Virus record (IMG/VR): IMGVR_UViG_3300020477_000990
Location: 62,001-126,000 of that record
Length of the DNA: 64,000 bases
Strand: one strand, 5' to 3'
Part shown: positions 12,159 through 57,130 of the stretch, piece after piece
Numbering within the stretch: the stretch's first letter is position 1
Layout of the letters: every line of letters begins with the position of its first letter
The notes under the pieces: generated by a model
Told to the model about the DNA's origin: nothing
The model's input: the letters and a program-made list of their open reading frames with translations, nothing else
The model's database searches: none
Made by a program: the position numbers and the translations under genes

Positions 12159-13502
12159 ATGATAGACCCAGAAAAAAATAAAGCAATTTGTCCATATCTT
12201 TTTAAAGGGGCATTGTTGGAGCATAGTCAAGGAAACATAAGACCATGCTGTAGATGGGAAACAGATGATGTTAGAGGCGACAATGTTTGGCCAAAGAAAA
12301 ATTTTTTAATTAATAAAGATGAAAAATATAATTCATATTTTACAGAAGCTAGGCAACAGATGATAGATGGTAAACCAGTTTATGAGTGTAGAGGATGTAT
12401 TACACAAGAAAAGCATGGAATTGAAAGTATGCGTACAAATGCGTTGAAAAATTTTGTAAACGACAATGAGAGCTTAATTAAAATAGAAGATTTATATAGA
12501 AAGCCTACAGGGTTGTTAAAAGAAATAACTGTACCAAAGTTAGAATATTTAGAAATAGAAAGTGGAAGATATTGTAATTTAAAATGTAGATCATGCGGTC
12601 CTGAATTATCCACAAGTTGGGATGAGGATTTAAAATTAAGTAAAGATCTTCAAAATCATTTTTTTGGTAATGAGCCAATAAAATGGAAGAACTTATTAGA
12701 TGAAAAGTCAATAAATCAATATCTTGAAAGTATTGAATATGATACTATTAAAGATCTTAAAACAGTTAAAATAACTGGTGGTGAACCTTTTTTAAGTGAT
12801 TCAGTTTTAAAATTTTTAAATAATTTAGTTGATTTTGATATTGCTAAAAACATTATTCTGGAAGTGTTTACAAATTGTAGTTTCTTTCCAAAAGAAAAGT
12901 ACAGAGAAATTCTTCCAAAATTTAAGAGAGTTCATATTATTTTAAGTTTAGATGGTGTAGGTGAACACATGGAATTTCTTAGAAAAAAATCAAAATGGAA
13001 AGTAGTAGAAAAAGTATCTAAGTATTGGGAAGGGTTATCATTAAGCAACAAAAATATATATTTAGAAATAAATCATACAATAACTCTTTACAATGTTTTA
13101 TATATTGGAGAATTTTTGTTTTGGATATTTAAGCATTTTAGTAGAGAATTATTAGAAAAGCATAGACCAGAATTAGGAGGATTTATTAAATCAACAGAAG
13201 TATGGAATCCTAGTTACCTATGTGTGAATAATACAAGTGATATTATAAAAGAAAAAATGCTATCATCTATAAAGTCTGATCAAATCTTGCTAGAAGAAAA
13301 GCTATTAAAATTAGGATACGATGAAGAATTTTTACTACGGTTTCATATAAAAACGGTGTTCATTGAATTGTATGATTTTATTAACGGTGCAGGAAAAGAT
13401 AAAGTTAAAACGTTTATTGAGAAAGCTAATATGTTTGATTCAGTAAGAAAAGAAAATTGGAAAGAAACATTTCCAAAATTAGTAAAGATATTAAATGATT
13501 GA
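12159..13502 (+). CDS. Radical SAM protein with N-terminal twitch domain
   Basis: CPY...RPCC...CRGC N-terminal cysteines; CNLKCRSC; ITGGEPF. Confidence 0.85.
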   Translation: MIDPEKNKAICPYLFKGALLEHSQGNIRPCCRWETDDVRGDNVWPKKNFLINKDEKYNSYFTEARQQMIDGKPVYECRGCITQEKHGIESMRTNALKNFVNDNESLIKIEDLYRKPTGLLKEITVPKLEYLEIESGRYCNLKCRSCGPELSTSWDEDLKLSKDLQNHFFGNEPIKWKNLLDEKSINQYLESIEYDTIKDLKTVKITGGEPFLSDSVLKFLNNLVDFDIAKNIILEVFTNCSFFPKEKYREILPKFKRVHIILSLDGVGEHMEFLRKKSKWKVVEKVSKYWEGLSLSNKNIYLEINHTITLYNVLYIGEFLFWIFKHFSRELLEKHRPELGGFIKSTEVWNPSYLCVNNTSDIIKEKMLSSIKSDQILLEEKLLKLGYDEEFLLRFHIKTVFIELYDFINGAGKDKVKTFIEKANMFDSVRKENWKETFPKLVKILND

Positions 13503-14757
13503 TTATAAAAAACATAAAACATTTTGTCCATACCCTATAAAAGGAGCTGTGATTGAAGGATCAAATTCTATGATTAAACCTTGTTGTAGATGGGATACTA
13601 AAAATCATAAACTAGATACTGGTGTTCCTTTTAGTTATAATAATATTTGGAAAGATATTCGTACAAAAATGTTAAAAGGAGAATATGTTTCTGGTTGTGT
13701 TAAATGCTATAAGGAAGAAGCAGATGGAAATAGAAGTATGCGTACAAATGCCTTAAAGAATTTTGTTGATGATATTAAAGATGTTAATCATTCTATAAGA
13801 GGGCCATTTGGATATAAAGAAACTATTTTGAAAACAGAATTAGAATATTTAGAAATTGAATCAGGAAGATACTGTAATTTAAAATGTAGGTCATGTAGTC
13901 CTAATTTATCTACAAGTTGGGATGAAGATTTAAAAAATAACAAAGATGCTGAACAAAATTTTTATGGAGGGAATAAAGATATTCATCCAGAAATGTTAAG
14001 TAGGCCTAGCATTAATGAATCAATAGCAGAATTAACATATAATGATTGTAAACATTTAAAAGAAATAAAAGTTACTGGTGGTGAACCATTTTTAAGTGAT
14101 GCGTTTCTTAAATTTTTAGAAAATTTAGTTGAATGGGATATATCAAAAAATATTACATTAGATATATTTACAAATTGTAGTTTCTTTCCAAAAGAAAAGT
14201 ATAGAGTATTATTGCCAAAGTTTAAATGCTCGTATATAAATTTAAGTTTAGATGCAATTGGAAAACGTGCTGAATTTATAAGAAAGAAATGTAATTGGAG
14301 TATAGTAGAAAAAGTATCCCAATATTGGGAGCAAGAATCTTTAGAGCATGATAATATTAAATTACAAATTAATCATACTGTTAGTCTATTTAATGTTTTA
14401 TACCTTAATGAGTTTATAATGTGGTGTGTAACAAACTTTAATCAAGACACATTTAATGATATTTCTTTTCTAGATCTTACAATTGTATACGGACCTGATT
14501 ATTTGTGCCTAAATAATGTTAGTGAGGTATCTAAAAATAGAATAATAAGATCATTAGAATTACAAATAATAGAACTAAAACAAAAAGTAAATTTACAAAA
14601 TGCTAGTAAATTATATGATCAAGTATTAAATACTATAAAGGGAAAAGGAACAAACTTACAAAGTATTTTTATTCAAAAAACAGAAATGTTCGATACTATT
14701 AGAAAAGAAAATTGGAAAGAAACATTTCCTGAGTTAGCAGAGGTATTAAATGTCTAA
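13495..14757 (+). CDS. N-terminal-twitch radical SAM, close tandem paralog of 12159..13502
   Basis: Identical LEYLEIESGRYCNLKCRSC, FTNCSFFPKEKYR and RKENWKETFP segments. Confidence 0.85.
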   Translation: MIDYKKHKTFCPYPIKGAVIEGSNSMIKPCCRWDTKNHKLDTGVPFSYNNIWKDIRTKMLKGEYVSGCVKCYKEEADGNRSMRTNALKNFVDDIKDVNHSIRGPFGYKETILKTELEYLEIESGRYCNLKCRSCSPNLSTSWDEDLKNNKDAEQNFYGGNKDIHPEMLSRPSINESIAELTYNDCKHLKEIKVTGGEPFLSDAFLKFLENLVEWDISKNITLDIFTNCSFFPKEKYRVLLPKFKCSYINLSLDAIGKRAEFIRKKCNWSIVEKVSQYWEQESLEHDNIKLQINHTVSLFNVLYLNEFIMWCVTNFNQDTFNDISFLDLTIVYGPDYLCLNNVSEVSKNRIIRSLELQIIELKQKVNLQNASKLYDQVLNTIKGKGTNLQSIFIQKTEMFDTIRKENWKETFPELAEVLNV

Positions 14758-15970
14758 AACATTTTGCATAATGCCATTTATACATATGAACTTAAAGCCA
14801 AAAGGCTTTGTAAGTGCTTGTTGGCGTAATCATGATTCGTTAGGACATTATGGTGATAAAAAACTTAAAGAAATATGGAACAATGACAATTATAAAAATA
14901 TACGTAAAAATTTATTAAATGGAGTGCAACATGAAGGTTGTAAAAGTTGTTGGGATATGGAGAAAGCAAATATAACATCAACAAGGCAACAATGTAATGA
15001 AGATTATAAAAAATATATTCCTAAGGTAATGGAAGAAGTTGTTGATGGTGAATTGCCAATGAATGTAAAATCAATTGAATTGCGTTTTGGTAATGTGTGT
15101 GATTTAAGATGTAGACATTGCTCATCGATATATAGTTCAACTTGGGCAGTAGCAGTAAACAAACATGACGATGTCAAACGATTATTTGACAAATATCAAT
15201 TAACAGAAACAAGTACGTGGCGTGGAATTTCTAAATTACCAGTTGAAACATTTAATCAAGTAGTAAATGATATAGGACCAAGAGTAGAAGAAATAGTTAT
15301 AGCAGGTGGTGAACCTTTAATACAGCCACAGCATTATGATGCTTTAGAAAGGCTTTTACCATATGCATATCATATTACATTAGAGTATAACACTAACTTG
15401 AACAATATCATATTACAAGGTAGACACGTGAGTGATCTTTGGGTGCATTTTAAAAATGTAAATTGTCGTGTTAGTATAGATGGAGATAAAAAGATACATA
15501 GTTACTTAAGAACAGGAAGTGATTTAGAAGCAATTGAAAATAATATTAAAACATTAAAATCTGAATTGCCGGCCAATCAGTTTAATTTAACAACTACCTG
15601 TACGGTTTCTTTATATAACATTTCTAGATTTGATGATATAATTGATTATTATGTATCTTTAGATTGTCCGTTCCATTGTAGTTTAGTTCAATATCCAGAG
15701 GCCTTAAATATTCAATATATTCCAAAGAAAATGAAAGACATTATAACAAAAAGAGTTTATAATAAAATAGATAAGTTAGGAAACATTAAGGAGAATCGTT
15801 TGGCCAAGATAATTAAATGGTCAAACTATGTATTAGATTACATGAATAATACTAACATTAATAATAATATGTTGCCATCTTCAGCAAAAGAATATGTTGA
15901 AACTATGGATAGATTAAATGGAACAAACTTTTTAGAAGTGTATCCAGAGTTTAAGGAGTTTTGGCAATGA
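14750..15970 (+). CDS. N-terminal-twitch radical SAM protein
   Basis: CIMPF..SACW..CKSC; FGNVCDLRCRHC; AGGEP. Confidence 0.85.
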   Translation: MSKTFCIMPFIHMNLKPKGFVSACWRNHDSLGHYGDKKLKEIWNNDNYKNIRKNLLNGVQHEGCKSCWDMEKANITSTRQQCNEDYKKYIPKVMEEVVDGELPMNVKSIELRFGNVCDLRCRHCSSIYSSTWAVAVNKHDDVKRLFDKYQLTETSTWRGISKLPVETFNQVVNDIGPRVEEIVIAGGEPLIQPQHYDALERLLPYAYHITLEYNTNLNNIILQGRHVSDLWVHFKNVNCRVSIDGDKKIHSYLRTGSDLEAIENNIKTLKSELPANQFNLTTTCTVSLYNISRFDDIIDYYVSLDCPFHCSLVQYPEALNIQYIPKKMKDIITKRVYNKIDKLGNIKENRLAKIIKWSNYVLDYMNNTNINNNMLPSSAKEYVETMDRLNGTNFLEVYPEFKEFWQ

Positions 15971-17127
15971 ACGATTTAAAATGGAGTGAATATGATTTTA
16001 CAAAAATTCCGTACGATGATCTCGTTCGTGTGGGACAACGTACTATGCTGTATCGGGATCTTTTTACAGTCAGTTGGCTTCTTGGTAGGTTTTGTAACTA
16101 TAGGTGTAGCTACTGTTGGCCGTATGCTAGGAGTGACAGAAAAGATCATAGGCCTACTGAGTTATGTCTTGCCACCATTGATGAGATCAAAAGACAAGCG
16201 AGAGATAGAGGATTTAATTCTTTCCACTTCTCACTTTCTGGCGGCGAGCCTACATTTCATCCTGGTTATATTGATATTCTACAGCATCTCGCTGATGATA
16301 CGCCAAATACTAATTATACTTCTGTCCATATGACAAGTAATTGTTCTAGAAATATGAAATGGTTTGAAAAATATGTACAAGCAGTCGCACCGTTCCATAG
16401 AGCCAGTATCACGGCTTCTTACCACAGGGAACACGTTAACACACAAGAAAAAAGATCAGAGTTCGCAGACAAATTATGTTATGCACAAGAACACGATGTC
16501 CAAGTTACAATCAACCAAGTTATGGTACCAGAATGGTTTGATGAACTATATGAGGAATCATTATACTTCCACGATAGAGGTATTAACGTTACGCTCAAAC
16601 CTCAATCGGATCCAACAGCGTCAACGGTTGTTGAAGGCTACACGGATGAAATGCTTCAAAAGTTATACAATGGTATGCCACAACGAGGATTTACAGAGGA
16701 AAAAAATAAACACGTAGAAAGACCAAAACCTACATTTAAAATAGATGATGATAGAACATTGCAAAAGCAAACATATTCAGAAGGTGTGCCACAGCATTTT
16801 CAAGTAGAGTTTAAAGACAAAGATAACAAAGCATGGTTTATGGATCAAGCAGAAAGATTTAATGCGTTTAATTTTAATAAGTTTAGCGGATGGGAATGCT
16901 CATCTGGATATAGATCAATTATTATTAGAGAACCAGATGGCAGTATAAAAAGGAGTTATAGTTGCCATGATGAACCACTTGGAAATATTGAAACAGGATT
17001 TAAATTATTTGACAAGCCAGAAAAATGTATATCACCAAGTTGCGTATCAAGTGCTGATTCAAAGATACCAAAAAGAGCTAAAGGAACTAAATTACCTTTA
17101 TGGCCAGGAGATAAATCATACGCATGA
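15961..17127 (+). CDS. Radical SAM protein with C-terminal twitch-like cysteines
   Basis: CNYRCSYC; LSGGEPT; C-terminal CSSG...SC...CISPSCVSSAD. Confidence 0.85.
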   Translation: MAMNDLKWSEYDFTKIPYDDLVRVGQRTMLYRDLFTVSWLLGRFCNYRCSYCWPYARSDRKDHRPTELCLATIDEIKRQARDRGFNSFHFSLSGGEPTFHPGYIDILQHLADDTPNTNYTSVHMTSNCSRNMKWFEKYVQAVAPFHRASITASYHREHVNTQEKRSEFADKLCYAQEHDVQVTINQVMVPEWFDELYEESLYFHDRGINVTLKPQSDPTASTVVEGYTDEMLQKLYNGMPQRGFTEEKNKHVERPKPTFKIDDDRTLQKQTYSEGVPQHFQVEFKDKDNKAWFMDQAERFNAFNFNKFSGWECSSGYRSIIIREPDGSIKRSYSCHDEPLGNIETGFKLFDKPEKCISPSCVSSADSKIPKRAKGTKLPLWPGDKSYA

Positions 17128-18823: not shown

Positions 18824-19343
18824 ACGTATAGCAATAACAGGAAATACTAAAAGAATAGGTAAAGCAATATACGAAGCATTTCCAAATTCAGTTGGATGTG
18901 GCAGAGGCGATGGCGGTGATATTACAACTATAGAAGGAAGAACAATGATACTTCATCAAGCAATGAGGTGTGATGTGTTTATTAATAATGCTCATGATGG
19001 TTTTAGTCAAGTTGAAATGTTGAATATGATGTTTACTGCTTGGAAAGATAAAGAAGATAAACATATTATTAATATTGGTACTGATGCTGTACCTTATACA
19101 GATTGGCAAGTTGTTCATAGGCAATATCCTATTGAAAAAATGGCTCTTCATGCTCAAGCTGAAATGTTACAAAGTCAAGAACGTAAATGTAAGATAACAA
19201 CTTTAGCATTAGGTCATGTAGATACAGAATTTAATAAAGAATATAATGGTCCTAAATTGTCGTACAATAGTATTGTAGATACAATTAAATGGGTTATAGA
19301 TCAGCCAACAGAAATAAAATTTATAGTAGTGAGTGCAAAATGA
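18816..19343 (+). CDS. Short SDR-like oxidoreductase
   Basis: TGNTKRIG, FINNA, IINIG, YPIEK. Confidence 0.75.
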   Translation: MSKRIAITGNTKRIGKAIYEAFPNSVGCGRGDGGDITTIEGRTMILHQAMRCDVFINNAHDGFSQVEMLNMMFTAWKDKEDKHIINIGTDAVPYTDWQVVHRQYPIEKMALHAQAEMLQSQERKCKITTLALGHVDTEFNKEYNGPKLSYNSIVDTIKWVIDQPTEIKFIVVSAK

Positions 19344-20185
19344 TAAATTGGCTAATTAAAAAACCAAGTTATACAATATTGTGTAATGAGATATTTTATA
19401 ATAAAGATAAATCAATCTCTTGTGAAATAATAATTCCTGAGGTAGTTAATAATGCTAAAGTTAAAACTATAGGGATTTGGCATTCAGGAGGAATAGATTC
19501 AACAATGTTGTTGTATTTGTTAGCTAAAATAATAAAAGATAATAAGTTAGATATAAACATTCAACCAGCAACTGTCGGAATAGATTCAAGTAATAAATCT
19601 AATCTTTTAAAATATTTAAAACAATGGCATACAGCTCTTATAGAAAATCAAGATGTATCTAAAATAATAGCAAATCTTGAAGGACATAATTTATCAAATT
19701 ATATAACAGGTCCAATGCATTCAAAAGCTACAATTGATAAGATTAGTAAGTTATTAGATATTGATTTTATATTACCACAAATAGTATCGTTTGCAGACCT
19801 AACACTTAAAAGTGTTTGGAATGGTTATTTTGATACAGAAAAAGAAAATATAAAAAACGGAGTATGGAATATTTTGTATACAGGAAGAAATGCAGTTCCA
19901 CCAGATGAATTATTTGATAGAAGTCCATTTCATGAGATGATTCCATTTTGGGAATCTAGAGAGCCTGGAGTTGTACACGAAACAATTTCAGATGATGGAT
20001 CAGAATCAAAACCTTTTAGCAATGTAGATAAAAAATTTATAGCTGAATTATACGAGCAGTATAATTTATTAGATGAATTGTTTCCATTAACAAAATCGTG
20101 TTTTGATCCTTATGTTAATGGAACAAAAGGTTGTGGTAAATGTTTTCATTGTTTTGAAAAGCAATATGGATTTGGAGAATATTAA
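19340..20185 (+). CDS. QueC-like PP-loop ATPase with C-terminal Cys4 site
   Basis: HSGGIDS; SC-x10-CGKCFHC; PFSNVDK..IA. Confidence 0.75.
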   Translation: MINWLIKKPSYTILCNEIFYNKDKSISCEIIIPEVVNNAKVKTIGIWHSGGIDSTMLLYLLAKIIKDNKLDINIQPATVGIDSSNKSNLLKYLKQWHTALIENQDVSKIIANLEGHNLSNYITGPMHSKATIDKISKLLDIDFILPQIVSFADLTLKSVWNGYFDTEKENIKNGVWNILYTGRNAVPPDELFDRSPFHEMIPFWESREPGVVHETISDDGSESKPFSNVDKKFIAELYEQYNLLDELFPLTKSCFDPYVNGTKGCGKCFHCFEKQYGFGEY

Positions 20186-21666
20186 TGAGTAAAACATATT
20201 GGGGTATATGTGGGTTAGGACATGATGGTGCTCTGTCTGTTGTTAAAGATGGTGAAATACTTTTTGCTGGGCATACTGAAAGATATACAAGGCAAAAGAA
20301 TGATCCAGATTTATGTCCAGAAATTATTAATGAAGCATTAGAATATGGTGAACCAGATAAAGTTATTTGGCATGAAAGACCATGGCAAAAAAAACGTAGA
20401 CAATTATATTCAGGACAATTTAATGAAGCATTTAGTCTAAGTAACTTGCCATCACAATATATGAAAACAGTTTTTAAAACTAAATTAAGTTATGTTGGCC
20501 ATCATAAATCACACGCGGCGGCAGGAGCATTTACATCTCCATATGAATCTGCCTGTGTTATAGTAGCAGATGCAATAGGTGAGTTTGATACAATTTCAAT
20601 ATGGGATTATGTTGCTCCAGGTAAATTAACAAAATTAAAAACGTATCAATATCCAAATAGTTTAGGATTATTATATTCAGCATTTACACAAAGAGTCGGG
20701 CTAACACCAAATGAAGAAGAATATATTCTAATGGGTATGGCGGCGTATGGTGAGCCAAAGTATGCTGAAGATATTGAAAGAACATATTTTAGTAAACAAG
20801 ATCCATTTAAATTAATGCAAAATGTTCATGCAGGAGTGCAAGATTGGATGCCTCATATACCAATGATCGATGATCAATTTAAGTATGATACTGCCGCATC
20901 AATACAAATGGTAATTGAAAAGAAAGTATTAGAATTATTTAATATGGCAAAAACATTAAGTTCAAAAAAGAATTTAGTATGGATGGGAGGTGTTGCATTA
21001 AATTGTGTAGCAAACTCTTTATTGTTGAGGAAGAATCAAAATATATGGGTTATGCCTAATCCAGGTGATGCTGGTAATTCATTAGGCGCCGCGGCACTAG
21101 GGTATGGTGGTAAAGTAAATTGGCAAGGACCTTTCTTAGGTACAAACATTGAAGGAGACTATCCTGTTGATTCTGCCTGTGAAGCATTAATGAAAGGAAA
21201 TATTATTGGTGTAGCAAGTGGTAGAGCAGAGTTTGGTCCTAGAGCATTAGGTAATAGATCATTACTTGCTGATCCACGTGGTAGTAAAATTAAAGATAGA
21301 GTAAATGAAATTAAGAAGAGACAAAAGTTTAGACCGTTTGCCCCTGCTATACTTGAAGAACACGTACATGATTATTTTACAATGCCTGGTGGTATTACGT
21401 CATCACCATATATGCAGGCAGTTGCAATATGTAGAAAACCACAAGAGTTTCCAGCAATTATTCATGCTGACGGAACTTCTCGTGTACAAACAGTTACACA
21501 AAAAGAAGCTCCAGGATTTTATAATTTAATTAAAAAGTTTTACGATCAAACTGGCTGTCCAATGCTTTTGAATACATCTTTAAACATTAAAGGTGAACCT
21601 TTGGTAAATACTAGAGCACACGCAGATGCGTTTGAAACAGAACATAATGTGAGGGTTTATTCATGA
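20185..21666 (+). CDS. Carbamoyltransferase (NodU/CmcH/TobZ family)
   Basis: HDGA, ERYTRQK, HHKSHAA, LMGMAAYG, GGVALNCVAN, EFGPRALGNRS, RVQTV, LNTSLNIKGEP. Confidence 0.95.
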   Translation: MSKTYWGICGLGHDGALSVVKDGEILFAGHTERYTRQKNDPDLCPEIINEALEYGEPDKVIWHERPWQKKRRQLYSGQFNEAFSLSNLPSQYMKTVFKTKLSYVGHHKSHAAAGAFTSPYESACVIVADAIGEFDTISIWDYVAPGKLTKLKTYQYPNSLGLLYSAFTQRVGLTPNEEEYILMGMAAYGEPKYAEDIERTYFSKQDPFKLMQNVHAGVQDWMPHIPMIDDQFKYDTAASIQMVIEKKVLELFNMAKTLSSKKNLVWMGGVALNCVANSLLLRKNQNIWVMPNPGDAGNSLGAAALGYGGKVNWQGPFLGTNIEGDYPVDSACEALMKGNIIGVASGRAEFGPRALGNRSLLADPRGSKIKDRVNEIKKRQKFRPFAPAILEEHVHDYFTMPGGITSSPYMQAVAICRKPQEFPAIIHADGTSRVQTVTQKEAPGFYNLIKKFYDQTGCPMLLNTSLNIKGEPLVNTRAHADAFETEHNVRVYS

Positions 21667-22877
21667 AAAATACAAAAATAAAAGTAGCAATGATTGGTTG
21701 CGGTAAGCTAGGTCAAGATTGTGCAGAAGTTATGGCTGAGAATTATTTTGTTGAAGGGTTTGATATTGAGCCAAGACAACCAGAAAATTTTAAAATGCAA
21801 TCAACTATTAAAGAAGCAGTTAAAGAAAAAGATATAGTTTTTATTGCGGCACCAACACCACATGATCCAAGGTATGATGGTTCAACACCAACTGCACATT
21901 TGGAACCAAAAGATTTTGATTATACAATTGTAAAAAATATTTTAAGTGAAGTAAATCAATTTGTTAATAAAAAGCAATTAGTAGTTTTAATATCAACAGT
22001 ATTACCTGGCACTACAAGACGTGAACTTGAACCTTTAATTACAAATGCAAGATTTGTTTATAATCCTTATTTAATAGCAATGGGATCTGTTAAATGGGAT
22101 ATGGTTAATCCAGAAATGGTTATGATTGGTACAGAAGATGGATCTAAAACAGGTGATGCAAAAGAATTAATAGATTTTTATAAACCAATGATGCAAAATA
22201 AACCAAGGTACATAGTAGGAACTTGGGATGAATGTGAATCAATAAAAATATTTTATAACACATTTATATCAGCAAAGATTGGGTTAGTTAATATGATTCA
22301 AGACGTAGCAGAAAAGCAAGGTAATATTAATGTTGATGTAGTAACATCTGCACTTGCATATTCTGATATGCGTATTATGGGTCCTAGATATATGACAGCA
22401 GGTATGGGCGATGGAGGTGCTTGTCACCCTAGAGATAACATTGCTTTACGTTGGATGGCAGATAATTTAGGATTAGGATATGATTTATTTGATGCTATAA
22501 TGGGAGCAAGAGAAGTTCAAGCAGAAAATTTAGCAAAGAAATGTATGGAATATAATTTACCAATTGTTATAGTTGGTAAAGCATATAAGCCACAGGTTCC
22601 ATATACAAATGGATCATATAGTTTATTAATTGGACATTACATTGAAAAAGCAGGGAGAACTTTGTACTACCAAGATGAGCATACAGGTGATAAGCCACCA
22701 AAAGATTTAGGAAGGGCAGTTTATCTATTAGCACATAATCCAAAAGTTACATACGGAACAGATGATACAGCAAAGTATGATTTTCCAAAAGGTTCTATAA
22801 TACTTGATCCATGGAGACAATGTCCACAGATAGAAGGATGTCGAGTTGTCGAGTATGGAAACACAAGAAACATATAA
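21663..22877 (+). CDS. UDP-glucose/GDP-mannose 6-dehydrogenase family protein
   Basis: IGCGKLG, AAPTP, STVLPGT, YNPYL, GGACHPRD. Confidence 0.9.
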   Translation: MKNTKIKVAMIGCGKLGQDCAEVMAENYFVEGFDIEPRQPENFKMQSTIKEAVKEKDIVFIAAPTPHDPRYDGSTPTAHLEPKDFDYTIVKNILSEVNQFVNKKQLVVLISTVLPGTTRRELEPLITNARFVYNPYLIAMGSVKWDMVNPEMVMIGTEDGSKTGDAKELIDFYKPMMQNKPRYIVGTWDECESIKIFYNTFISAKIGLVNMIQDVAEKQGNINVDVVTSALAYSDMRIMGPRYMTAGMGDGGACHPRDNIALRWMADNLGLGYDLFDAIMGAREVQAENLAKKCMEYNLPIVIVGKAYKPQVPYTNGSYSLLIGHYIEKAGRTLYYQDEHTGDKPPKDLGRAVYLLAHNPKVTYGTDDTAKYDFPKGSIILDPWRQCPQIEGCRVVEYGNTRNI

Positions 22878-32659: not shown

Positions 32660-32956
32660 ATGATAGGCGATAACTATAACAAGGTATTAGCTAATCATAT
32701 CTTCAATAGATTAGAAGAAATACAAACAGATGAGCATAGGATTCTAAATCAACCTAAATTATGGGCATCAGGCTTTCTTTTTACGGTAAATGACATTGAA
32801 AATATCATACAAGAAGTAAATAGTGCTAGTTTTGACGAAAGGGCATTATGGCACGACAAAATAAAACCCACAGAGGGCGACGTAAAGTCGGAAGTAAAAA
32901 AAGAAGAAACAGACGTAGACAAAGAAAGAAAAGAAGATAGTTCATATCTTGACTAA
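32660..32956 (+). CDS. Hypothetical protein
   Basis: ATG 32660 right after the upstream stop. Confidence 0.55.
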   Translation: MIGDNYNKVLANHIFNRLEEIQTDEHRILNQPKLWASGFLFTVNDIENIIQEVNSASFDERALWHDKIKPTEGDVKSEVKKEETDVDKERKEDSSYLD

Positions 32957-32977
32957 TCATATATTTTAAAGTATAAT
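32949..32977 (+). promoter_or_regulatory. Sigma70 promoter of the tmRNA gene, TTGACT-N17-TATAAT
   Basis: Near-consensus boxes. Confidence 0.8.
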
Positions 32978-32983
32978 TACTAT

Positions 32984-33228: not shown

Positions 33229-33231
33229 TTA

Positions 33232-46701: not shown

Positions 46702-47721
46702 TTATCCTAATATTTTCTTTACTCTTAATTCGTCTTGATCAGTAACTACATGAAATTCTATTCTATGTAGTAATCTTCTTTCTAATTTTTTCATTGTAAG
46801 TCCTGCAACGTCACCTTTAACATCAGTACGTCTATGGATACAGTTAACTTGGTCCATATATAATATATCGCCATCGTCCCATATATGATCATATATGTAA
46901 TCTTCTTGTACATAATTGTCCATAAAGTAATTTTTAAAATCAATGAACTCACTAGTAGACGCACCTATAATTTCTGTTACTTGTGATGGAGAAAAGTGTA
47001 CACCTTCTTTACCATTAGTACAAATTGCTACTAAAGGTTTAACTTTATTCATAAGGTGGTCTCCACCATGACCAAATTCTATATTTCTATAACTTTCATC
47101 TACGTCTGGGATAATACCTTCTTCACCATCAACAAAGCCCCAACGTACTTGAGTGTTACGCATCCAAAATTTATGTTCAGCACTTTCTTTTTCAAACCTA
47201 TCAATAGTTTGACATACTTGAGTAACTGAACCTGTAGTTCCTTCTACACCTTGTAAGCCAACAAACTCTGGTAATGGTCTTTCAATGTAACCTTTAATTG
47301 ATTTATTACCTGGTAAGTAAAAAGGAATTTTATCACGTAATGATTCTGCATTGTGCCAATTTAATCTTTTACTAAAGCCTGCGGCAACACCTTCATATGA
47401 TGTACCTTTTTTATTAGACCATTTTTTCTTTGCTGTTACTTTGTCAAGTCCAGGATATATCGGACAACCGTCTTCATCATAGTAACCAGTAAGGTGTTTA
47501 GTTGGAACATCTTTCTTTTGTCCATGAGTTGCTACTGTACCTAATAAACCTGATAGTTCATAAAATTGTTCTACATTAAAATTAACTTTTTTAAGAGCTA
47601 CAACTAATTCTTGTTTTAGTAAGTGTGCAAGGTCATGTACGTCTTGATAGTTGAAAGGATATTTTAATCCTGTAACTTTAACACCATATTTTCCAAATAG
47701 TTTTTTCTTTTGTACTTTCAT
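46702..47721 (-). CDS. TauD-like Fe/2OG enzyme with HxA motif
   Basis: WHNAES in place of WHND; HIWDDGDILYMDQVNCIHRR. Confidence 0.78.
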   Translation of the reverse strand: MKVQKKKLFGKYGVKVTGLKYPFNYQDVHDLAHLLKQELVVALKKVNFNVEQFYELSGLLGTVATHGQKKDVPTKHLTGYYDEDGCPIYPGLDKVTAKKKWSNKKGTSYEGVAAGFSKRLNWHNAESLRDKIPFYLPGNKSIKGYIERPLPEFVGLQGVEGTTGSVTQVCQTIDRFEKESAEHKFWMRNTQVRWGFVDGEEGIIPDVDESYRNIEFGHGGDHLMNKVKPLVAICTNGKEGVHFSPSQVTEIIGASTSEFIDFKNYFMDNYVQEDYIYDHIWDDGDILYMDQVNCIHRRTDVKGDVAGLTMKKLERRLLHRIEFHVVTDQDELRVKKILG

Positions 47722-48755
47722 TAAACCATAACCTCTAATCTATTTAATAAACGTTCTTCTAACGCAGTCATATCTAAACCATCAACAGCATAATTCATAT
47801 CTGTTCTTCTATGCATACAAGTAATTTGATCCATATAAAATATATCACCATCTTGCCATACATGATCATAGATATATTCTGGAGTAACATACTCATCCAT
47901 AATTCTTTGTTTAAGTTCTTTCCATTGATTTGATGCTACATAATCTTCAGCTAATATTTTTTTATGTTCATCATCGTATAATATTTTAGTAGTACCATCA
48001 GCAATTTCATTTGATATATCAACAACTTGACTAGGAGTAAATCTTAAACCTTCTTTACCATTTGGAGCAACTTGTACTAATGGTTGTTGTTTAATGTTTA
48101 ATTTAATAGCATCTTTATATTTGTCCATATCTTCTTTAGTTGACATTTCATCAGTACCATGAATATCATCATAACCTTCTTCACCTGGTTTAGGTAAGTC
48201 TGGCATAATACCTTCATCACCTGGAACTACACCCCAAAGTACATTTAATTTTTTTAATAGTTCTTTGTTTTCTTGAGGTTCTTTTTCAAATCTATCTATC
48301 ATTTGGCATACTTGAGTAATACTACCTGTTGTTCCTTTAACTCCTTGTAGTCCTACAAAGTTTGCCGCAGGATTAGTACTATCAGTTTCATTGTTATGCC
48401 AATTTAATCTTTTAGAAATACCAGTAGGCATTCCAGCATATCTTCCTTCTTTTGTTTTCTTTGCTGTTACTTTCCACATACCAGGAAGTATAGTTTTACC
48501 TTCATCATCTAAATAGCCAGTCCAACCAGTTGGTTCTGGGATACCTGCTTGTAATCCAAATGTGCTAATTTTACCTAGGCGTCCTGTAAGCTCATAATAC
48601 TGCTTTGCTGTATAGTTAATTTTAGGTAACACTACAACTAGTTCGTTAGTTAGCAATTTTTTAAGCTCAGCTATTTCGCCCCATTTAAATGGATATGAAA
48701 GCTCTGTTACAGATGCCCCCATATTTCCAAATCCTTTGAGTGGTGATACTTTCAT
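47721..48755 (-). CDS. TauD-like Fe/2OG enzyme with HxN motif
   Basis: WHNNETD; HVWQDGDIFYMDQITCMHRR. Confidence 0.78.
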   Translation of the reverse strand: MKVSPLKGFGNMGASVTELSYPFKWGEIAELKKLLTNELVVVLPKINYTAKQYYELTGRLGKISTFGLQAGIPEPTGWTGYLDDEGKTILPGMWKVTAKKTKEGRYAGMPTGISKRLNWHNNETDSTNPAANFVGLQGVKGTTGSITQVCQMIDRFEKEPQENKELLKKLNVLWGVVPGDEGIMPDLPKPGEEGYDDIHGTDEMSTKEDMDKYKDAIKLNIKQQPLVQVAPNGKEGLRFTPSQVVDISNEIADGTTKILYDDEHKKILAEDYVASNQWKELKQRIMDEYVTPEYIYDHVWQDGDIFYMDQITCMHRRTDMNYAVDGLDMTALEERLLNRLEVMV

Positions 48756-53963: not shown

Positions 53964-53968
53964 GTTGA

Positions 53969-54645: not shown

Positions 54646-55881
54646 CTACTGTGAAATTCGCCCTAATATTGAACACATTTTTTCAGCTGAATACCCACGT
54701 GCTTTATCATAATAGGCCAATAAATCTTGGGTGTTTTTGTAGGTGTACGTTGTTTTACGTTTTTTAATTAGTTCTATAAAGTCAGATACAAAACTATATT
54801 TTGTAGCTTCAAAAGGCGATCCTGCTGATCTAATTAATAAAAGAACTTCATTAATAACTTCTTCTTTTATATCATCTGGAAGTATAGCCAAGTCTAATGG
54901 TTTAGGCCACATTACTAATACAGGAATAAATTCATCAAAGTTATTTTCTTCTGTGTATCTAATTAAATCAGGAAGTTGATCTAAATTTAATAATTGTATT
55001 GCTGATGTTAATACTGAACTAATATTATTAAAACCTTTTTCTTTAATTAATCTGTTAAACTTATATTGATTATTAAAAACTTTATTCCAAGTTGCAGGCC
55101 ATCTAATATATTCAAATGTACTACCCATTCCATCTGTAGACCAATGCACTTCAAATTTTTGAAACTTATTCATTATGTCTATCATCTTTGTTAAGTCAGT
55201 TGTACCATTTGTTACCATCATTATAGAAATGTTTCTTGCATATTTTGTTTCAGATAATCTTTTAATAAATTCTCTAAAGCCTTCTAATAATGTAGGCTCA
55301 CCTCCTGTAAATTTTATTTTTTGTATAGTATGAGCTGTACCTAATAATTCATTTAATTGCTTTTCATGGAAGTTAGTATTATGAGCATCATCTGGAATAT
55401 GTTTTTTTAAATGTAAAGGAACTTTATGTTGCTCTTTTTCTTTAACGTGTAAAGATGAACTATGTCCATCACACATAATACAAGCAAGATTACATTTGTT
55501 ACCAAACTTTATATCTAATGTTCTTAATTCTAAATGTTTATCTTTTTTAATTTTATTTAAAAAATCTGGATCAATATCTTCATAACGTTTTGTAATAGAA
55601 TATCTTTTACTCATATTGTATGCACCAGACTGTTCATATTGATAACATCTAGTACAAGACTTAACTGGTTTATTATCTAACATTTTTTGTCTAATGTCAT
55701 TTAATACTTTACTGTTTTTCCAATTATTAATAAATGAATCTTTATATAAATCTGCTTCAACAGTTTCTGAATAACAACATAACATTGAATGGCCTTGTGC
55801 TGAATTGGCTATTTCAGTAAATGGTAAAGCACAAAAATACTTGCCATGATCATTTAAAAACTTTTCATATTCTCTACTCAT
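54646..55881 (-). CDS. N-terminal-twitch radical SAM protein (similar to 43743..45014)
   Basis: FCALPF..LCC..CTRC; KFGNKCNLACIMC; TGGEP. Confidence 0.85.
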   Translation of the reverse strand: MSREYEKFLNDHGKYFCALPFTEIANSAQGHSMLCCYSETVEADLYKDSFINNWKNSKVLNDIRQKMLDNKPVKSCTRCYQYEQSGAYNMSKRYSITKRYEDIDPDFLNKIKKDKHLELRTLDIKFGNKCNLACIMCDGHSSSLHVKEKEQHKVPLHLKKHIPDDAHNTNFHEKQLNELLGTAHTIQKIKFTGGEPTLLEGFREFIKRLSETKYARNISIMMVTNGTTDLTKMIDIMNKFQKFEVHWSTDGMGSTFEYIRWPATWNKVFNNQYKFNRLIKEKGFNNISSVLTSAIQLLNLDQLPDLIRYTEENNFDEFIPVLVMWPKPLDLAILPDDIKEEVINEVLLLIRSAGSPFEATKYSFVSDFIELIKKRKTTYTYKNTQDLLAYYDKARGYSAEKMCSILGRISQ

Positions 55882-57130
55882 TTAGTTCTGCCCCAATGAC
55901 AGGTGTTAATCCTTTTACTGCTTTATTAAACATAGCTTCTGTCATATCGTTATGTTTTGATTTTTGTACACATAATCCACAGCCACATATTTTATTTGGA
56001 CAAGTTATTACAGGCATTTTACCTGTTGCTAATTGTTTTTCTAATCTTAATAATACTTTTTCACTTTCTGATATCTTACCAATAGGCCCACGTTTACCAC
56101 CAAAATTTGCACGACAAGTTTGATGGTGTAGTATATTATCATATTCTTGTTCAATATGTAACCAATTCCAATTAATTAAGCAAGACCAATCTTTGTATTC
56201 TGTTGAACACGCAAACACACTTGGATTCCATTTATCAGTATCAAGTTCTTTATTATTGTTATTATAATGATCATCAGTTAATGTATAAAATGTTCTTTGC
56301 CCACAGCAAGGTCTTCCTAAACTTTTTCTACCTTCATCTTTTTTAGGTTCAACTTTTGCTTTTTGTTTTTGTACTTTTTCTTGATCATCTTTATATTCAT
56401 ATTCAGCATCATTGTTTTCATCTATTTTTTTAGGTTGCTTTTGATTATTTTCTTTTTTATTTCTAATTGCCCAAAACTCTCTAAACCATTTATGTTGTTC
56501 TGGAGTATATCTATGATTGTACTTGTCATTTTCATAGCTCTCTCCAATAATTCTTGGTACAAATTTTACATTATCTCTTGTAAACTTTCCAACTAAATCA
56601 ATACATTCATTAAAGTATTCTTCTTTAGCATGAAACATTAAATTAACTTTGTGTCTAACATTTGAATCTTTTAATTGATAAATTCTATCTATTACTTTAT
56701 TTTTTATTTTTTGATCTGCTTCACAATGATAACTTACTGTTACACTATCAACATTATCAATTAATTTTGTACAATATTTTTCTGACATGGCACCATTAGT
56801 TGTTACATCAACTATTACATCATCATCATTTTGATTGTGTATGTATTCACACATATCTAAAAAGTTTGGATTGTTAGTTGGCTCACCGCCTGTAAAACCA
56901 ATGTTCCACTTACGTTTGTAAGTCATATATGATTGTAAAAGTTTTTTATAATCAAAAACAAACTTACTTGTTTTAATTAATGTTTCTAAACTTGCGTGAG
57001 GTGAAGTATTATTATGTCTATGTGAAGGACAATATGTACAATCAAAATTACATCTTAAACCTAAATCCCAAGTTACTTCAAATGAGTAAGGATTTTTTAT
57101 ATTATTATCTATTGCAATTATCTCTGACAT
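55874..57130 (-). CDS. Radical SAM protein with C-terminal twitch-like cysteines (same type as 15961..17127)
   Basis: WDLGLRCNFDCTYC; FTGGEPT; C-terminal C...CPNKICGCGLC. Confidence 0.85.
   Translation of the reverse strand: MSEIIAIDNNIKNPYSFEVTWDLGLRCNFDCTYCPSHRHNNTSPHASLETLIKTSKFVFDYKKLLQSYMTYKRKWNIGFTGGEPTNNPNFLDMCEYIHNQNDDDVIVDVTTNGAMSEKYCTKLIDNVDSVTVSYHCEADQKIKNKVIDRIYQLKDSNVRHKVNLMFHAKEEYFNECIDLVGKFTRDNVKFVPRIIGESYENDKYNHRYTPEQHKWFREFWAIRNKKENNQKQPKKIDENNDAEYEYKDDQEKVQKQKAKVEPKKDEGRKSLGRPCCGQRTFYTLTDDHYNNNNKELDTDKWNPSVFACSTEYKDWSCLINWNWLHIEQEYDNILHHQTCRANFGGKRGPIGKISESEKVLLRLEKQLATGKMPVITCPNKICGCGLCVQKSKHNDMTEAMFNKAVKGLTPVIGAELNE

What the first reader, a model, noticed from the sequence alone, without database searches (positions are those of the whole stretch)
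12159..57130. Expansion of seven N-terminal-twitch radical SAM paralogs plus two C-terminal-twitch enzymes
Seen: 12159, 13495, 14750, 22846, 33232, 43743 and 54646 share the order C..P/PCC/CxxC, then GNxCNxxCxxC..SS, GGEP and SIDG, i.e. the auxiliary cluster lies before the catalytic domain. 15961 and 55874 form a second type. The 12159/13495 pair is a recent tandem duplication. From memory this matches the functionally unknown NCBIfam N_Twi_rSAM family, found mostly in uncultured marine and aquifer sequences. Inference: many such sequences may be phage-borne, and each paralog may act on a different site of one macromolecular substrate.
Basis: partly seen in the sequence, partly recalled or inferred. 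Interest (0 to 1): 0.7.

Follow-up and report, generated by a model that had tools for sequence, protein, structure and literature searches.

The report
Radical-SAM enzyme island in jumbo phage
A complete 328-kb marine jumbo phage gives about 9% of its genome to 23 radical-SAM enzymes; 14 belong to an uncharacterised family whose extra iron-sulfur domain sits at the front, and that family is shared with predatory Bdellovibrionota bacteria, where it lies among sugar-polymer genes.

Summary
The seven ORFs are real N_Twi_rSAM members: NF033640 scores 238-324 bits against a cut-off of 170. ORFs 15961 and 55874 are a second radical-SAM type, but a C-terminal twitch could not be shown.

The window is part of a complete 328,149-bp marine jumbo myophage. 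Its capsid protein is 65-69% identical to those of the PA5oct and CBB group. Genome-wide the phage has 14 N_Twi genes and 9 other radical-SAM genes. It also has SufS and SufBCD, an FNR-like reductase and a TokK-like B12 radical-SAM enzyme.

The paralogs are old (15-37% identity). The 12159/13495 pair is 46-50% identical, so it is not a recent duplication. Each paralog has closer orthologs in other genomes than in its own.

The family is not only viral. It passes the cut-off in 110 of 401 sampled Bdellovibrionota genomes, against 3 of 401 Bacteroidota. In a tree, phage and bacterial members interleave.

In the bacteria the islands are interleaved with glycosyltransferases, an ABC-2 exporter and nucleotidyltransferases. 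In the phage they sit with a UDP-sugar dehydrogenase, a carbamoyltransferase, sulfotransferase and acetyltransferase genes, and GT-B-like proteins.

Best reading (about 0.45): a glycan-tailoring assembly line in which each paralog does one radical C-H functionalisation. The chemistry is untested.

The parts
12159..13502 (+). N_Twi_rSAM paralog 1. Sits in the fast-evolving slot and is the tandem partner of 13495.
   Evidence: NF033640 250 bits, cut-off 170. CX3CX2C at residue 139. 46-50% identical to 13495, 41% to the single gene in that slot of relative L019.
13495..14757 (+). N_Twi_rSAM paralog 2.
   Evidence: NF033640 279 bits. Its start overlaps the stop of the upstream gene.
14750..15970 (+). 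N_Twi_rSAM paralog 3, part of the conserved backbone.
   Evidence: NF033640 324 bits. Pfam SPASM on residues 6-68. 87% identical in relatives L019-L022 and 40-46% in more than 100 other contigs. AF2 model pLDDT 87.
15961..17127 (+). Type-2A radical-SAM enzyme. No N-terminal twitch; four invariant C-terminal Cys.
   Evidence: Pfam Radical_SAM 51 bits. 72-93% identical across phage relatives and 60% to Bdellovibrionota. Highest metatranscriptome contig depth in the stretch laid.
22846..24228 (+). N_Twi_rSAM paralog 4, in a variable slot. The TTG start is doubtful.
   Evidence: NF033640 274 bits, aligned from residue 21. The slot is empty in L019, L022 and L023 and holds a 31%-identical gene in L021.
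33232..34584 (+). N_Twi_rSAM paralog 5, directly after the tmRNA gene.
   Evidence: NF033640 319 bits, aligned from residue 30. SPASM on residues 34-109. Sister of the genome copy at 145014.
43743..45014 (+). N_Twi_rSAM paralog 6. Its start overlaps the stop of the GT-B-like gene.
   Evidence: NF033640 238 bits. Sister of 54646 at 32-34% identity.
54646..55881 (-). N_Twi_rSAM paralog 7.
   Evidence: NF033640 267 bits.
55874..57130 (-). Type-2B radical-SAM enzyme with a Cys-rich C-terminus.
   Evidence: Pfam Radical_SAM 38 bits. BLAST-clusters with 15961. 16 Cys.
6294..8075 (+). Cobalamin-type (class B) radical-SAM enzyme, TokK/CysS-like.
   Evidence: Radical_SAM 40 bits plus a weak B12-binding hit. 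TokK E 5e-49, CysS E 9e-33. 91-92% identical in relatives.
3019..4485 (+). SufB (Fe-S cluster scaffold).
   Evidence: SUFBD_core 267 bits plus SufBD_N. Absent at the syntenic place of relatives L019-L023.
8847..9530 (+). SufC-like ABC ATPase.
   Evidence: ABC_tran 86 bits, and it lies between SufB and the SufD-like gene.
9517..10095 (+). Short SufD-like protein.
   Evidence: SUFBD_core 120 bits.
24276..25034 (+). FNR-like FAD/NAD(P) oxidoreductase, a candidate electron supplier.
   Evidence: FAD_binding_6 plus NAD_binding_1. 79-88% identical in relatives.
42352..43746 (+). GT-B-like putative glycosyltransferase, one of six paralogs in the genome.
   Evidence: No Pfam hit. AF2 pLDDT 63. All 50 best PDB matches are GT-B-type structures (glycosyltransferases and close relatives): VldE, OtsA, GtfA, SdgB, a phage glycosyltransferase; E from 5e-4, TM 0.36-0.40. 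Atlas lead to GT10.
20185..21666 (+). NodU/TobZ-type carbamoyltransferase.
   Evidence: Carbam_trans_N and Carbam_trans_C, 143 and 190 bits. 81-84% identical in relatives.
21663..22877 (+). UDP-glucose/GDP-mannose dehydrogenase family enzyme.
   Evidence: UDPG_MGDP_dh_N and the central domain. 90-92% identical in relatives.
19289..20185 (+). PP-loop ATPase (QueC/NAD-synthase-like). Paralogs at 45901-46698(-) and 57130-57846(-).
   Evidence: Weak QueC and NadE hits. Three-member paralog family. 57130 abuts the type-2B radical-SAM gene.
11217..12032 (-). Asp/Asn-hydroxylase-family 2OG oxygenase. Paralogs at 17124-17657(+) and 35834-36412(+).
   Evidence: PF05118 hits. The same family lies next to radical-SAM genes in 18 related loci.
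46702..48755 (-). Two TauD-family dioxygenases. A third lies at 29137-30138(+).
   Evidence: PF02668 hits.
41711..42361 (+). Sulfotransferase.
   Evidence: Sulfotransfer_2, 38 bits.
399..2213 (+). TonB-dependent receptor at the head of the island.
   Evidence: Plug plus TonB_dep_Rec_b-barrel. 62% identical in relatives.

Best explanation
What it is. The nine ORFs are real radical-SAM genes, and seven are true N_Twi_rSAM members. They belong to an island in a complete marine jumbo myophage that carries 23 radical-SAM genes in all, 14 of them N_Twi.

The phage also brings supply genes:
- Fe-S assembly: SufS plus SufB, SufC and a SufD-like gene.
- An FNR-like reductase.
- A TonB-dependent receptor.
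- A B12-type radical-SAM methylase.

Most likely function. The island is a carbohydrate-tailoring assembly line that works in the infected cell. Sugar building blocks or a growing glycan are made and decorated by a UDP-sugar dehydrogenase, a carbamoyl-, a sulfo- and an acetyltransferase, PP-loop amidating enzymes, short-chain dehydrogenases, 2OG oxygenases and GT-B-like glycosyltransferases.

Proposed mechanism of one N_Twi enzyme:
1. The CX3CX2C cluster cleaves SAM to the 5'-deoxyadenosyl radical.
2. The radical abstracts a hydrogen from one particular sugar carbon.
3. The four-Cys N-terminal auxiliary cluster accepts or returns the second electron, as in BtrN or anSME. The outcome would be oxidation, epimerisation, deoxygenation or C-C bond formation.
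4. Each paralog is specific for a different sugar or position.

A conserved backbone with swappable N_Twi slots would diversify the product, in the way O-antigen loci diversify.

Shown here: gene identity, copy number, domain order, age of the paralogs, distribution, neighbourhoods, and hints of transcription.
Inferred: the substrate class, the reaction type, the role of the auxiliary cluster, and where the product ends up (host envelope or virion).
For: - Membership and motifs. BtrN twitch match.
- 23 genes with intact CX3CX2C, 28.8 kb, 8.8% of the genome.
- Supply genes: SufB/C/D, SufS (E 5e-107), FNR-like reductase, TokK-like B12 enzyme, TonB-dependent receptor.
- Sugar-type enzymes in the same operons: UDP-sugar dehydrogenase and carbamoyltransferase between N_Twi-3/type-2A and N_Twi-4; SDR-like and GNAT; sulfotransferase, kinase-like, AsnA-like.
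- A GT-B-like gene overlaps the start of N_Twi-6, and another abuts the genome copy at 147382.
- Independent bacterial contexts. In four Bdellovibrionota chromosomes the radical-SAM islands are interleaved with GT2, GT1 and PMT_2 glycosyltransferases, NTP_transf_3, a GNAT and an ABC_tran plus ABC2_membrane exporter. In a fifth they sit beside NeuB and a CMP-sugar-type transferase.
- These islands hold orthologs of phage genes at 49-64% identity.
- Cooperation between paralogs: tandem 2x and 3x N_Twi fusions and an FkbM-methyltransferase fusion.
- Backbone plus variable slots.
- Related viral loci are a median 43% radical-SAM genes.
- BtrN and BlsE, both sugar-modifying, are among the nearest solved relatives.
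Against: - No substrate or product has been seen.
- The phage has no detectable GT2, sugar nucleotidyltransferase or sugar aminotransferase.
- The GT-B call rests on a low-confidence model (pLDDT 63, TM about 0.4).
- GT-B adjacency to N_Twi in the phage is only suggestive (P about 0.055).
- The best structural neighbours of the N_Twi model are mostly peptide-modifying SPASM/twitch enzymes (CteB, SkfB, SuiB, MftC, PqqE, anSME).
- TPR and Sel1 fusions, Asp/Asn hydroxylases, a SET domain, nitroreductase and M16 peptidase fit a peptide or protein substrate as well.
- Many neighbours have no recognisable family.
- Only five bacterial contexts were read.
Confidence: 0.45

Rival explanations
1. Peptide or protein maturation. 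The N_Twi enzymes would be SPASM/twitch-type maturases that install crosslinks, epimerisations or oxidations at several sites of a ribosomal peptide or of a phage or host protein.
For: - Nearest solved and Swiss-Prot structures are mostly peptide maturases.
- TPR and Sel1 fusions exist.
- Asp/Asn beta-hydroxylase-family oxygenases recur next to the radical-SAM genes.
- A SET domain, a GNAT and a nitroreductase are in the window.
- M16 peptidase lies near two bacterial islands.
- A conserved 74-77-aa protein sits next to radical-SAM genes in 14 loci.
Against: - There is no RRE/PqqD-like domain; the N-terminus is the twitch domain and the C-terminus is a helical bundle.
- No Cys/Ser/Thr-rich, leader-core-like small ORF is conserved. 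The 74-77-aa family is evenly conserved and has no Cys.
- The two fibre proteins in the window have ordinary composition.
- The interleaved glycosyltransferases and ABC-2 exporter are not explained, unless the target is a glycoprotein.
Confidence: 0.2
2. Diffusible secondary metabolite. The island would make an aminoglycoside-, pseudo-oligosaccharide- or nucleoside-like small molecule rather than a surface polymer.
For: The enzyme set resembles aminoglycoside and nucleoside pathways:
- a twitch radical-SAM enzyme like BtrN;
- a class B radical-SAM enzyme like TokK;
- a TobZ-type carbamoyltransferase;
- an APH/choline-kinase-like kinase, a DAO oxidoreductase, TauD oxygenases, a HAD and a GNAT;
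- best GT-B fold matches to the pseudo-glycosyltransferase VldE;
- BlsE as a structural neighbour.
Against: - No cyclitol synthase or sugar aminotransferase was found; the single DegT-like hit is SufS.
- The ABC-2 exporter and GT-C (PMT_2) genes in bacterial islands point to polymers or lipid-linked glycans.
- Resemblance of the enzyme set is not a membership test.
Confidence: 0.12
3. No common pathway. The paralogs would have unrelated targets (host metabolism, cofactor repair, counter-defence) and be clustered only because phage accessory genes accumulate in hyperplastic regions.
For: - The copies are spread over six places of the genome.
- Some slots vary in presence or absence.
- Earlier papers read radical-SAM-rich phages as general metabolic boosters (PMC2853527; PMC5332604).
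Against: - Multi-module fusions exist.
- Tandem, often overlapping genes are the norm.
- The same sets of orthogroups travel together in phages and in bacterial chromosomes.
- Radical-SAM genes are mostly adjacent to other radical-SAM genes in 58 loci.
Confidence: 0.1
4. Lipid tailoring. The enzymes would carry out radical C-H chemistry on acyl or isoprenoid chains of envelope lipids.
For: - Two FA_desaturase-family genes are in the island.
- From background knowledge, the lipid A hydroxylase LpxO belongs to the Asp/Asn-hydroxylase family.
- GDGT-MAS and GMGT synthase appear among the fold neighbours.
- LPG_synthase_TM lies near one bacterial island.
- SGNH/GDSL-like neighbours occur.
Against: - The fold matches are weak (TM 0.28-0.39).
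- There are no acyl carrier, acyltransferase or isoprenoid genes next to the N_Twi genes.
- The sugar enzymes and glycosyltransferases are left unexplained.
Confidence: 0.08
5. Nucleic-acid hypermodification. The enzymes would modify phage DNA or tRNA bases.
For: - QueC-like PP-loop genes sit next to radical-SAM genes here and in KVP40.
- Weak viperin-like similarity of the cores.
- From background knowledge, the GT-B fold is also that of the T4 DNA glucosyltransferases.
Against: - No TGT/DpdA and no thymidylate-synthase-like hydroxymethylase is in the complete genome.
- QueE and QueC scores are far below their cut-offs.
- The bacterial chromosomal islands beside polysaccharide genes do not fit.
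Confidence: 0.05

Closest known systems
NCBIfam NF033640 N_Twi_rSAM (twitch domain-containing radical SAM protein; uncharacterised)
   Same: All seven ORFs, and 14 genome-wide, match end to end above the curated cut-off. They have the N-terminal Cys domain followed by the CX3CX2C core.
   Different: Nothing differs; this is membership. The family has no known reaction. A full-text search found no paper naming N_Twi_rSAM or NF033640.
BtrN (2-deoxy-scyllo-inosamine dehydrogenase, twitch radical-SAM enzyme) and anSME
   Same: A radical-SAM core plus a Cys-ligated auxiliary [4Fe-4S] domain. The BtrN twitch aligns to N_Twi residues 5-71 (E 2e-4). anSME is among the fold neighbours. BtrN acts on a sugar-like substrate.
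   Different: The auxiliary domain is N-terminal here, not C-terminal. Core similarity is only at superfamily level (TM about 0.4; anSME 19-23 bits against a cut-off of 349). There is an extra C-terminal helical bundle.
RiPP maturases with SPASM/twitch domains (CteB, SkfB, SuiB, MftC, PqqE)
   Same: They are the best Foldseek matches (E 2e-7 to 1e-5).
   Different: No RRE domain, a permuted domain order, 11-17% identity, TM 0.35-0.43, and no precursor peptide found.
Radical-SAM-rich myophages: Campylobacter phages CP220/CPt10 (11-12 genes; PMC2853527) and the marine genome TARA_ERS488813_N000010 (12 genes plus an Fe-S carrier; PMC5332604)
   Same: Large myophages with many radical-SAM genes and, in the marine case, Fe-S assembly genes. 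Function is unknown in both.
   Different: CP220 has no N_Twi member at E 1e-10 or better. This phage has about twice as many radical-SAM genes and a full SufS plus SufBCD set. Whether the TARA genome carries N_Twi genes was not tested.
TokK/CysS class B (cobalamin) radical-SAM methylases, for ORF 6294-8075 only
   Same: E 5e-49 to TokK over residues 15-388.
   Different: The Pfam B12-binding hit is below threshold (18 against 32 bits). The substrate is unknown.

Membership tests
NCBIfam NF033640 N_Twi_rSAM | Whole-protein HMM score at or above the curated cut-off (170 bits) with near full-length alignment | tested here: met
   238-324 bits, model positions 1 or 2 to 391-398 of 398, for all seven ORFs. 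14 copies over the cut-off in the genome.
NCBIfam NF033640 N_Twi_rSAM | SPASM/twitch-like Cys domain placed N-terminal to the radical-SAM core | tested here: met
   C6, C64 and C67 are invariant and C24 is present in 13 of 14, all upstream of C117/C121/C124. Pfam SPASM hits the N-terminus of 14750 and 33232. BtrN twitch match.
Radical SAM superfamily (PF04055) | CX3CX2C motif and a Radical_SAM domain hit | tested here: met
   All 23 genes have one CX3CX2C. Pfam hits are 27.7-51 bits for the nine ORFs; only 12159 (27.7) is just under the 29.5 cut-off.
Radical SAM superfamily (PF04055) | Binds [4Fe-4S] clusters and cleaves SAM | not testable with these tools
   Needs anaerobic reconstitution, EPR or Moessbauer spectroscopy, and a 5'-deoxyadenosine assay.
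Canonical SPASM/twitch radical-SAM enzymes (auxiliary domain C-terminal): claimed for 15961 and 55874 | Recognisable SPASM or twitch domain after the core | tested here: not met
   No SPASM hit. A PDB profile search matches the core only. hhalign against the N_Twi profile aligns the core only. Four invariant C-terminal Cys remain compatible with some auxiliary cluster.
   MoaA up to 42 bits against 284; QueE up to 27 against 200-300; anSME up to 23 against 349; viperin up to 40 against 180.
SUF Fe-S assembly system | SufS desulfurase plus a SufB/SufC/SufD scaffold | tested here: met
   SufB 267 bits; SufD-like 120 bits; ABC ATPase between them. SufS at genome 125-1333, E 5e-107 to solved SufS. 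SufE and SufU were not looked for.
GT-B glycosyltransferases (for 42352-43746 and five paralogs) | Two Rossmann-like domains, with fold matches to glycosyltransferases | tested here: inconclusive
   All 50 top PDB matches are GT-B-type structures, but the model has pLDDT 63 and TM 0.36-0.40. There is no sequence-level hit.

The most novel reading that the evidence does not exclude
Jumbo phages and predatory Bdellovibrionota share a mobile radical-SAM glycan-diversification island. Each of the dozen or more N_Twi orthogroups would catalyse a different, so far undescribed radical reaction on a sugar, such as C-C bond formation, epimerisation or oxidation at unactivated carbons. The island would then build surface glycans unlike any known. 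The phage would bring its own Fe-S assembly to run this oxygen-sensitive chemistry in an aerobic ocean host.
Probability: 0.25. Interest if true: 0.85.

Novelty: new variant of a known kind. Interest (0 to 1): 0.72.

Why it matters
N_Twi_rSAM is a large family: 8,502 clusters at 50% identity match the profile at E 1e-30 or better. No reaction is known for it, and its domain order is reversed relative to all studied SPASM/twitch enzymes.

This work places the family in two reservoirs, aquatic jumbo phages and Bdellovibrionota. It shows that the paralogs are old, separately conserved specificities that travel as sets. It ties them to glycan genes in independent lineages.

It also names cultured systems in which the function can be tested:
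- Pseudobdellovibrio exovorus JSS, 8 copies.
- Ralstonia phage RsoM2USA, 2 copies.
- KVP40-like vibriophages, 3 distant copies.

If the glycan reading holds, it opens a new area of radical carbohydrate chemistry. It would also explain why some phages spend about a tenth of their genome, plus a private Fe-S assembly line, on radical-SAM enzymes. That question has been open since CP220 in 2010 and the Tara genomes in 2017.

Tried and rejected
- Megablast of the island against 50,697 phage records: no match.
- The search for related loci with the 14-paralog alignment failed because the alignment was too divergent. It was repeated with one orthogroup. The genome scan was therefore narrow and at first wrongly suggested the family was almost purely viral, with 2 real hits. 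The family-HMM sample of Bdellovibrionota corrected this.
- Misbinned-phage explanation for the Bdellovibrionales MAG hits: rejected. Copies lie in single-contig chromosomes of 2.2-2.9 Mb with bacterial neighbours such as DnaK/GrpE and YceG, at GC 36-45%.
- Bdellovibrionota as the host: not supported. The phage's tmRNA is alpha-type (132 bits), and no alpha-type tmRNA reached the cut-off in 121 Bdellovibrionota.
- 7-deazaguanine or hydroxymethyl-pyrimidine DNA modification: no TGT/DpdA and no ThyA-like gene.
- The DegT-like hit turned out to be SufS.
- A search for a C-terminal twitch in the type-2 enzymes found nothing.
- RiPP precursor hunt. The small ORFs at 30.1-33.2 kb show nothing precursor-like. 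The conserved small families are a Cys-free 74-77-aa protein and stand-alone twitch-like proteins.
- The fibre proteins at 48932 and 50795 were considered as a modified substrate. Their composition is ordinary and nothing links them to the enzymes.
- Many conserved neighbours gave no Pfam or NCBIfam hit.
- Metatranscriptome contigs are patchy and do not exclude DNA carry-over.
- Complex prediction was not used, because no specific protein pair is claimed to bind.

Full report
**1. Observation**

ORFs exist at all nine stated coordinates. The seven ORFs at 12159, 13495, 14750, 22846, 33232, 43743 and 54646(-) match NCBIfam NF033640 (N_Twi_rSAM) over nearly the whole 398-position model. Their scores are 250, 279, 324, 274, 319, 238 and 267 bits against a curated cut-off of 170. 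Every other radical-SAM equivalog scores far below its own cut-off.

The same HMM reaches its cut-off in none of 14 model genomes, so seven copies in 64 kb is not chance.

Invariant positions, numbered on ORF 14750, are:
- C6, C64, C67 and E71, with C24 present in 13 of 14;
- then C117-x3-C121-x2-C124 and S129;
- then G186-G187-E188, N216, S242 and R254.

Pfam SPASM hits the N-terminus of two copies. A profile of the 14750 orthogroup aligns residues 5-71 to the twitch domain of BtrN (E 2e-4). An AlphaFold model (pLDDT 87) shows an N-terminal hairpin-plus-helices domain, a partial TIM barrel and a C-terminal helical bundle.

ORFs 15961 and 55874 are a distinct type. Their CX3CX2C lies near the N-terminus, they have no N-terminal Cys domain, and they cluster with each other. 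A C-terminal twitch was not detectable by Pfam, a PDB profile search or profile-profile comparison. Four C-terminal cysteines are invariant across 18 homologs.

**2. Where the window lies**

The window is bases 62001-126000 of a 328,149-bp IMG/VR virus record with direct terminal repeats. CheckV rates it 100% complete. GC is 31.8%, and it has 16 tRNA genes and a permuted alpha-type tmRNA.

It has a gp23-type major capsid protein and a large terminase. The capsid protein is 65-69% identical to those of the jumbo myophages PA5oct, Phosso, Vibrio phage 2.275.O and CBB.

Near-identical DNA occurs in at least 18 marine or seawater metagenome runs from several studies. Two marine metatranscriptomes hold patchy contigs, most at 99% identity or more. 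They are deepest on the type-2A gene and the tmRNA. This suggests transcription but does not prove it.

**3. The full complement**

Genome-wide, 14 ORFs pass the N_Twi cut-off. Nine further ORFs are other radical-SAM enzymes. All 23 have one intact CX3CX2C and together they cover 28.8 kb, or 8.8% of the genome.

ORF 6294-8075 is a class B enzyme related to TokK (E 5e-49) and CysS.

The phage also encodes:
- SufB, a SufC-like ATPase and a short SufD-like protein inside the island;
- SufS at genome 125-1333 (E 5e-107);
- an FNR-like flavoprotein;
- a TonB-dependent receptor at the head of the island.

Reading these as a supply chain for iron or B12, clusters and electrons is an inference.

**4. 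Age of the paralogs**

In-genome identities are 15-37%. The exception is 12159/13495 at 46-50%.

ORF 14750 has orthologs at 87% identity in near relatives and at 40-46% in more than 100 other contigs. Its best in-genome paralog is only 29-30% identical.

A tree of 59 sequences shows most genome copies in separate, well-supported orthogroups shared with other phages and with bacteria. Three in-genome sister pairs appear: 12159/13495, 43743/54646, and 33232 with the copy at 145014.

Synteny with near relatives L019-L023 shows a conserved backbone:
- B12 radical-SAM enzyme, 91-92% identical;
- N_Twi-3, 69-87% (86-87% in L019, L021 and L022);
- type-2A, 90-93%;
- carbamoyltransferase, 81-84%;
- UDP-sugar dehydrogenase, 90-92%.

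Fast or variable slots interrupt this backbone. The 12159/13495 slot holds a single gene in the relatives, only 40-44% identical. The 22846 slot is empty in three relatives and holds a 31%-identical gene in a fourth. SufB, SufC and SufD are absent at those places in the relatives.

So 'recent tandem duplication' is wrong as a statement about sequence age. The tandem state itself is lineage-specific.

**5. Size and range of the family**

A profile of the 14 copies finds 48,250 representatives at E 1e-3 or better and 8,502 at E 1e-30 or better, among 1.84 billion cluster representatives. These include proteins of 800-1,400 aa with two or three N_Twi modules in tandem. Other fusions carry TPR or Sel1 repeats or an FkbM methyltransferase.

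Phage side:
- One orthogroup alone gives 76 IMG/VR loci.
- These loci hold a median of about five N_Twi genes within 10 kb either side.
- A median 43% of their ORFs are radical-SAM genes, mostly adjacent to one another.
- Relatives of 231-289 kb carry 7-14 copies over the cut-off.
- The nearest ESM Atlas clusters are 92-100% viral.

Bacterial side:
- 110 of 401 sampled Bdellovibrionota genomes pass the cut-off, usually with several copies.
- Only 3 of 401 Bacteroidota do.
- The bacterial copies lie in chromosomes, for example CP003537.1 of 2.66 Mb with 8 copies. From memory, this is Pseudobdellovibrio (Bdellovibrio) exovorus JSS.
- These islands contain orthologs of phage genes at 49-64% identity, including the type-2A enzyme at 60%.
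- Phage and bacterial rows interleave in the tree; well-supported branches force at least 10-12 changes of label.

Cultured phages:
- Ralstonia phage RsoM2USA has two full members.
- KVP40 has three sub-threshold ones, next to a QueC-like gene and a HAD.
- CP220, known for 11 radical-SAM genes, has none.

**6. Likely function**

No characterised relative is close. The best solved and Swiss-Prot structures are CteB, SkfB, SuiB, BlsE, viperin, anSME, MftC, PqqE and MoaA. They match the core only, at TM 0.35-0.43 and 11-17% identity.

The neighbourhood is the main evidence. In the phage the radical-SAM genes share operons with:
- a UDP-glucose/GDP-mannose dehydrogenase and a NodU/TobZ-type carbamoyltransferase;
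- SDR-like proteins and a GNAT;
- a sulfotransferase, a kinase-like protein and an AsnA-like ligase;
- three PP-loop ATPases and a HAD;
- several 2OG oxygenases (three TauD, three Asp/Asn-hydroxylase-like, one 2OG-FeII_Oxy_3 plus a Pfam-negative paralog);
- two FA-desaturase-like proteins, a DAO oxidoreductase and a nitroreductase.

A six-member family without any Pfam hit includes 42352-43746, whose stop overlaps the start of N_Twi-6. It folds with low confidence into something whose 50 best PDB matches are all GT-B-type structures.

In Bdellovibrionota, the four islands examined are interleaved with GT2, GT1 and PMT_2 glycosyltransferases, a nucleotidyltransferase, a GNAT and an ABC_tran plus ABC2_membrane pair. 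An N_Twi gene overlaps a GT2 gene in one of them. A fifth island lies beside NeuB and a CMP-sugar-type transferase.

I therefore favour a carbohydrate-tailoring assembly line. Each N_Twi paralog would perform one radical C-H functionalisation on a sugar, and the N-terminal cluster would act as the second-electron conduit, as in BtrN or anSME. Confidence is about 0.45.

Rivals:
- Peptide or protein maturation: supported by the fold neighbours, the TPR fusions and the Asp/Asn hydroxylases, but no RRE domain or precursor was found.
- A diffusible aminoglycoside- or nucleoside-like metabolite.
- Lipid tailoring.
- Nucleic-acid modification: weakened by the absence of TGT/DpdA and ThyA-like genes.
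- No shared pathway at all.

**7. Host**

The alpha-type tmRNA scores 132 bits. No such tmRNA reached the cut-off in 121 Bdellovibrionota. The host is therefore more likely an alphaproteobacterium than a Bdellovibrionota member. If so, the shared island reflects gene flow or a shared need rather than a simple host-to-phage capture. This is inference only.

**8. Novelty**

The family is catalogued but uncharacterised, and the full-text search found no paper naming it. Radical-SAM-rich myophages have been noted before without explanation: CP220/CPt10 (PMC2853527) and a Tara genome with 12 radical-SAM genes plus an Fe-S carrier (PMC5332604).

New here:
- the scale: 23 genes plus SufS and SufBCD;
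- the identification of N_Twi as the expanded family;
- the reservoir in both phages and Bdellovibrionota, with shared orthogroups;
- the backbone-plus-variable-slot architecture;
- the recurrent link to glycan genes;
- cultured systems in which to test function.

Noticed in passing
window 32937-33228 (Rfam); ARAGORN gives 32952-33270: A permuted two-piece alpha-type tmRNA (RF01849, 132 bits; tag ADENLALAA) ends at or inside the annotated start of N_Twi-5 (33232). The family HMM aligns only from residue 30, so the true start is probably one of the downstream ATGs. No alpha-type tmRNA reached the cut-off in 121 Bdellovibrionota, which hints at an alphaproteobacterial host.
   Followed up: partly
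window 3019-4485, 8847-10095; genome 125-1333 (L001): The phage carries SufB, a SufC-like gene, a SufD-like gene and SufS. SufB, SufC and SufD are missing from the otherwise syntenic islands of near relatives L019-L023, so they look like a recent insertion into the island.
   Followed up: partly
window 399-2213: A phage-encoded TonB-dependent receptor (Plug plus beta-barrel) opens the island and is 62% conserved in relatives. Its ligand (iron, B12 or something else) is unknown.
   Followed up: no
window 48932-50284 and 50795-53881: Two fibre-like proteins sit in a stretch of 37-41% GC against about 30% elsewhere. The first starts with an Mtd_N (major tropism determinant) domain. A diversity-generating retroelement was not looked for. 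Peptidase_S74 fibre-like giants also lie next to Bdellovibrionota radical-SAM islands (L110, L111).
   Followed up: no
L028:847-1137, L043:3819-4118, L049:3710-4012 and others (11 loci): Stand-alone proteins of about 100 aa look like the N_Twi twitch domain alone (C...CC...C..C). They are flanked by radical-SAM genes in related phage contigs.
   Followed up: no
genome 277002-277295 (L013:7002-7295) and 22 related loci: A well-conserved, Cys-free protein of 74-77 aa (97 aa in this genome's ORF call) lies next to radical-SAM genes in 14 loci. Its function is unknown and it is not precursor-like.
   Followed up: partly
window 26415-28333: Three consecutive paralogous ORFs (205, 270 and 169 aa) have no detectable family. 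Several other small paralog families are also confined to the island.
   Followed up: no
window 10892-11239 (-): A 115-aa SET-domain protein is encoded on the opposite strand, just upstream of the radical-SAM array.
   Followed up: no
L099 (KVP40 133498-137744): KVP40 keeps a compact cassette: a QueC-like PP-loop gene, a PF04095-like gene, two divergent N_Twi-like radical-SAM genes and the HAD gene 30.2, next to NadV. It echoes window 54646-59224 (N_Twi, type-2B, PP-loop, unknown, HAD).
   Followed up: partly
genome ends (1-76 and 328075-328149): The record begins and ends with the same tRNA-Ala gene, which is the terminal repeat that marks it as complete.
   Followed up: no
window 22846: The TTG start of N_Twi-4 overlaps the UDP-sugar dehydrogenase gene by 32 nt, and the HMM aligns only from residue 21. 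The real start is probably further downstream.
   Followed up: no
L063 (IMGVR_UViG_3300027833_000001, 165 kb): This 'viral' contig carries six N_Twi genes and three GT-B-like genes. Its N_Twi genes group closely with those of CP003537.1. It may be a phage of Bdellovibrionota or a misclassified bacterial contig.
   Followed up: no
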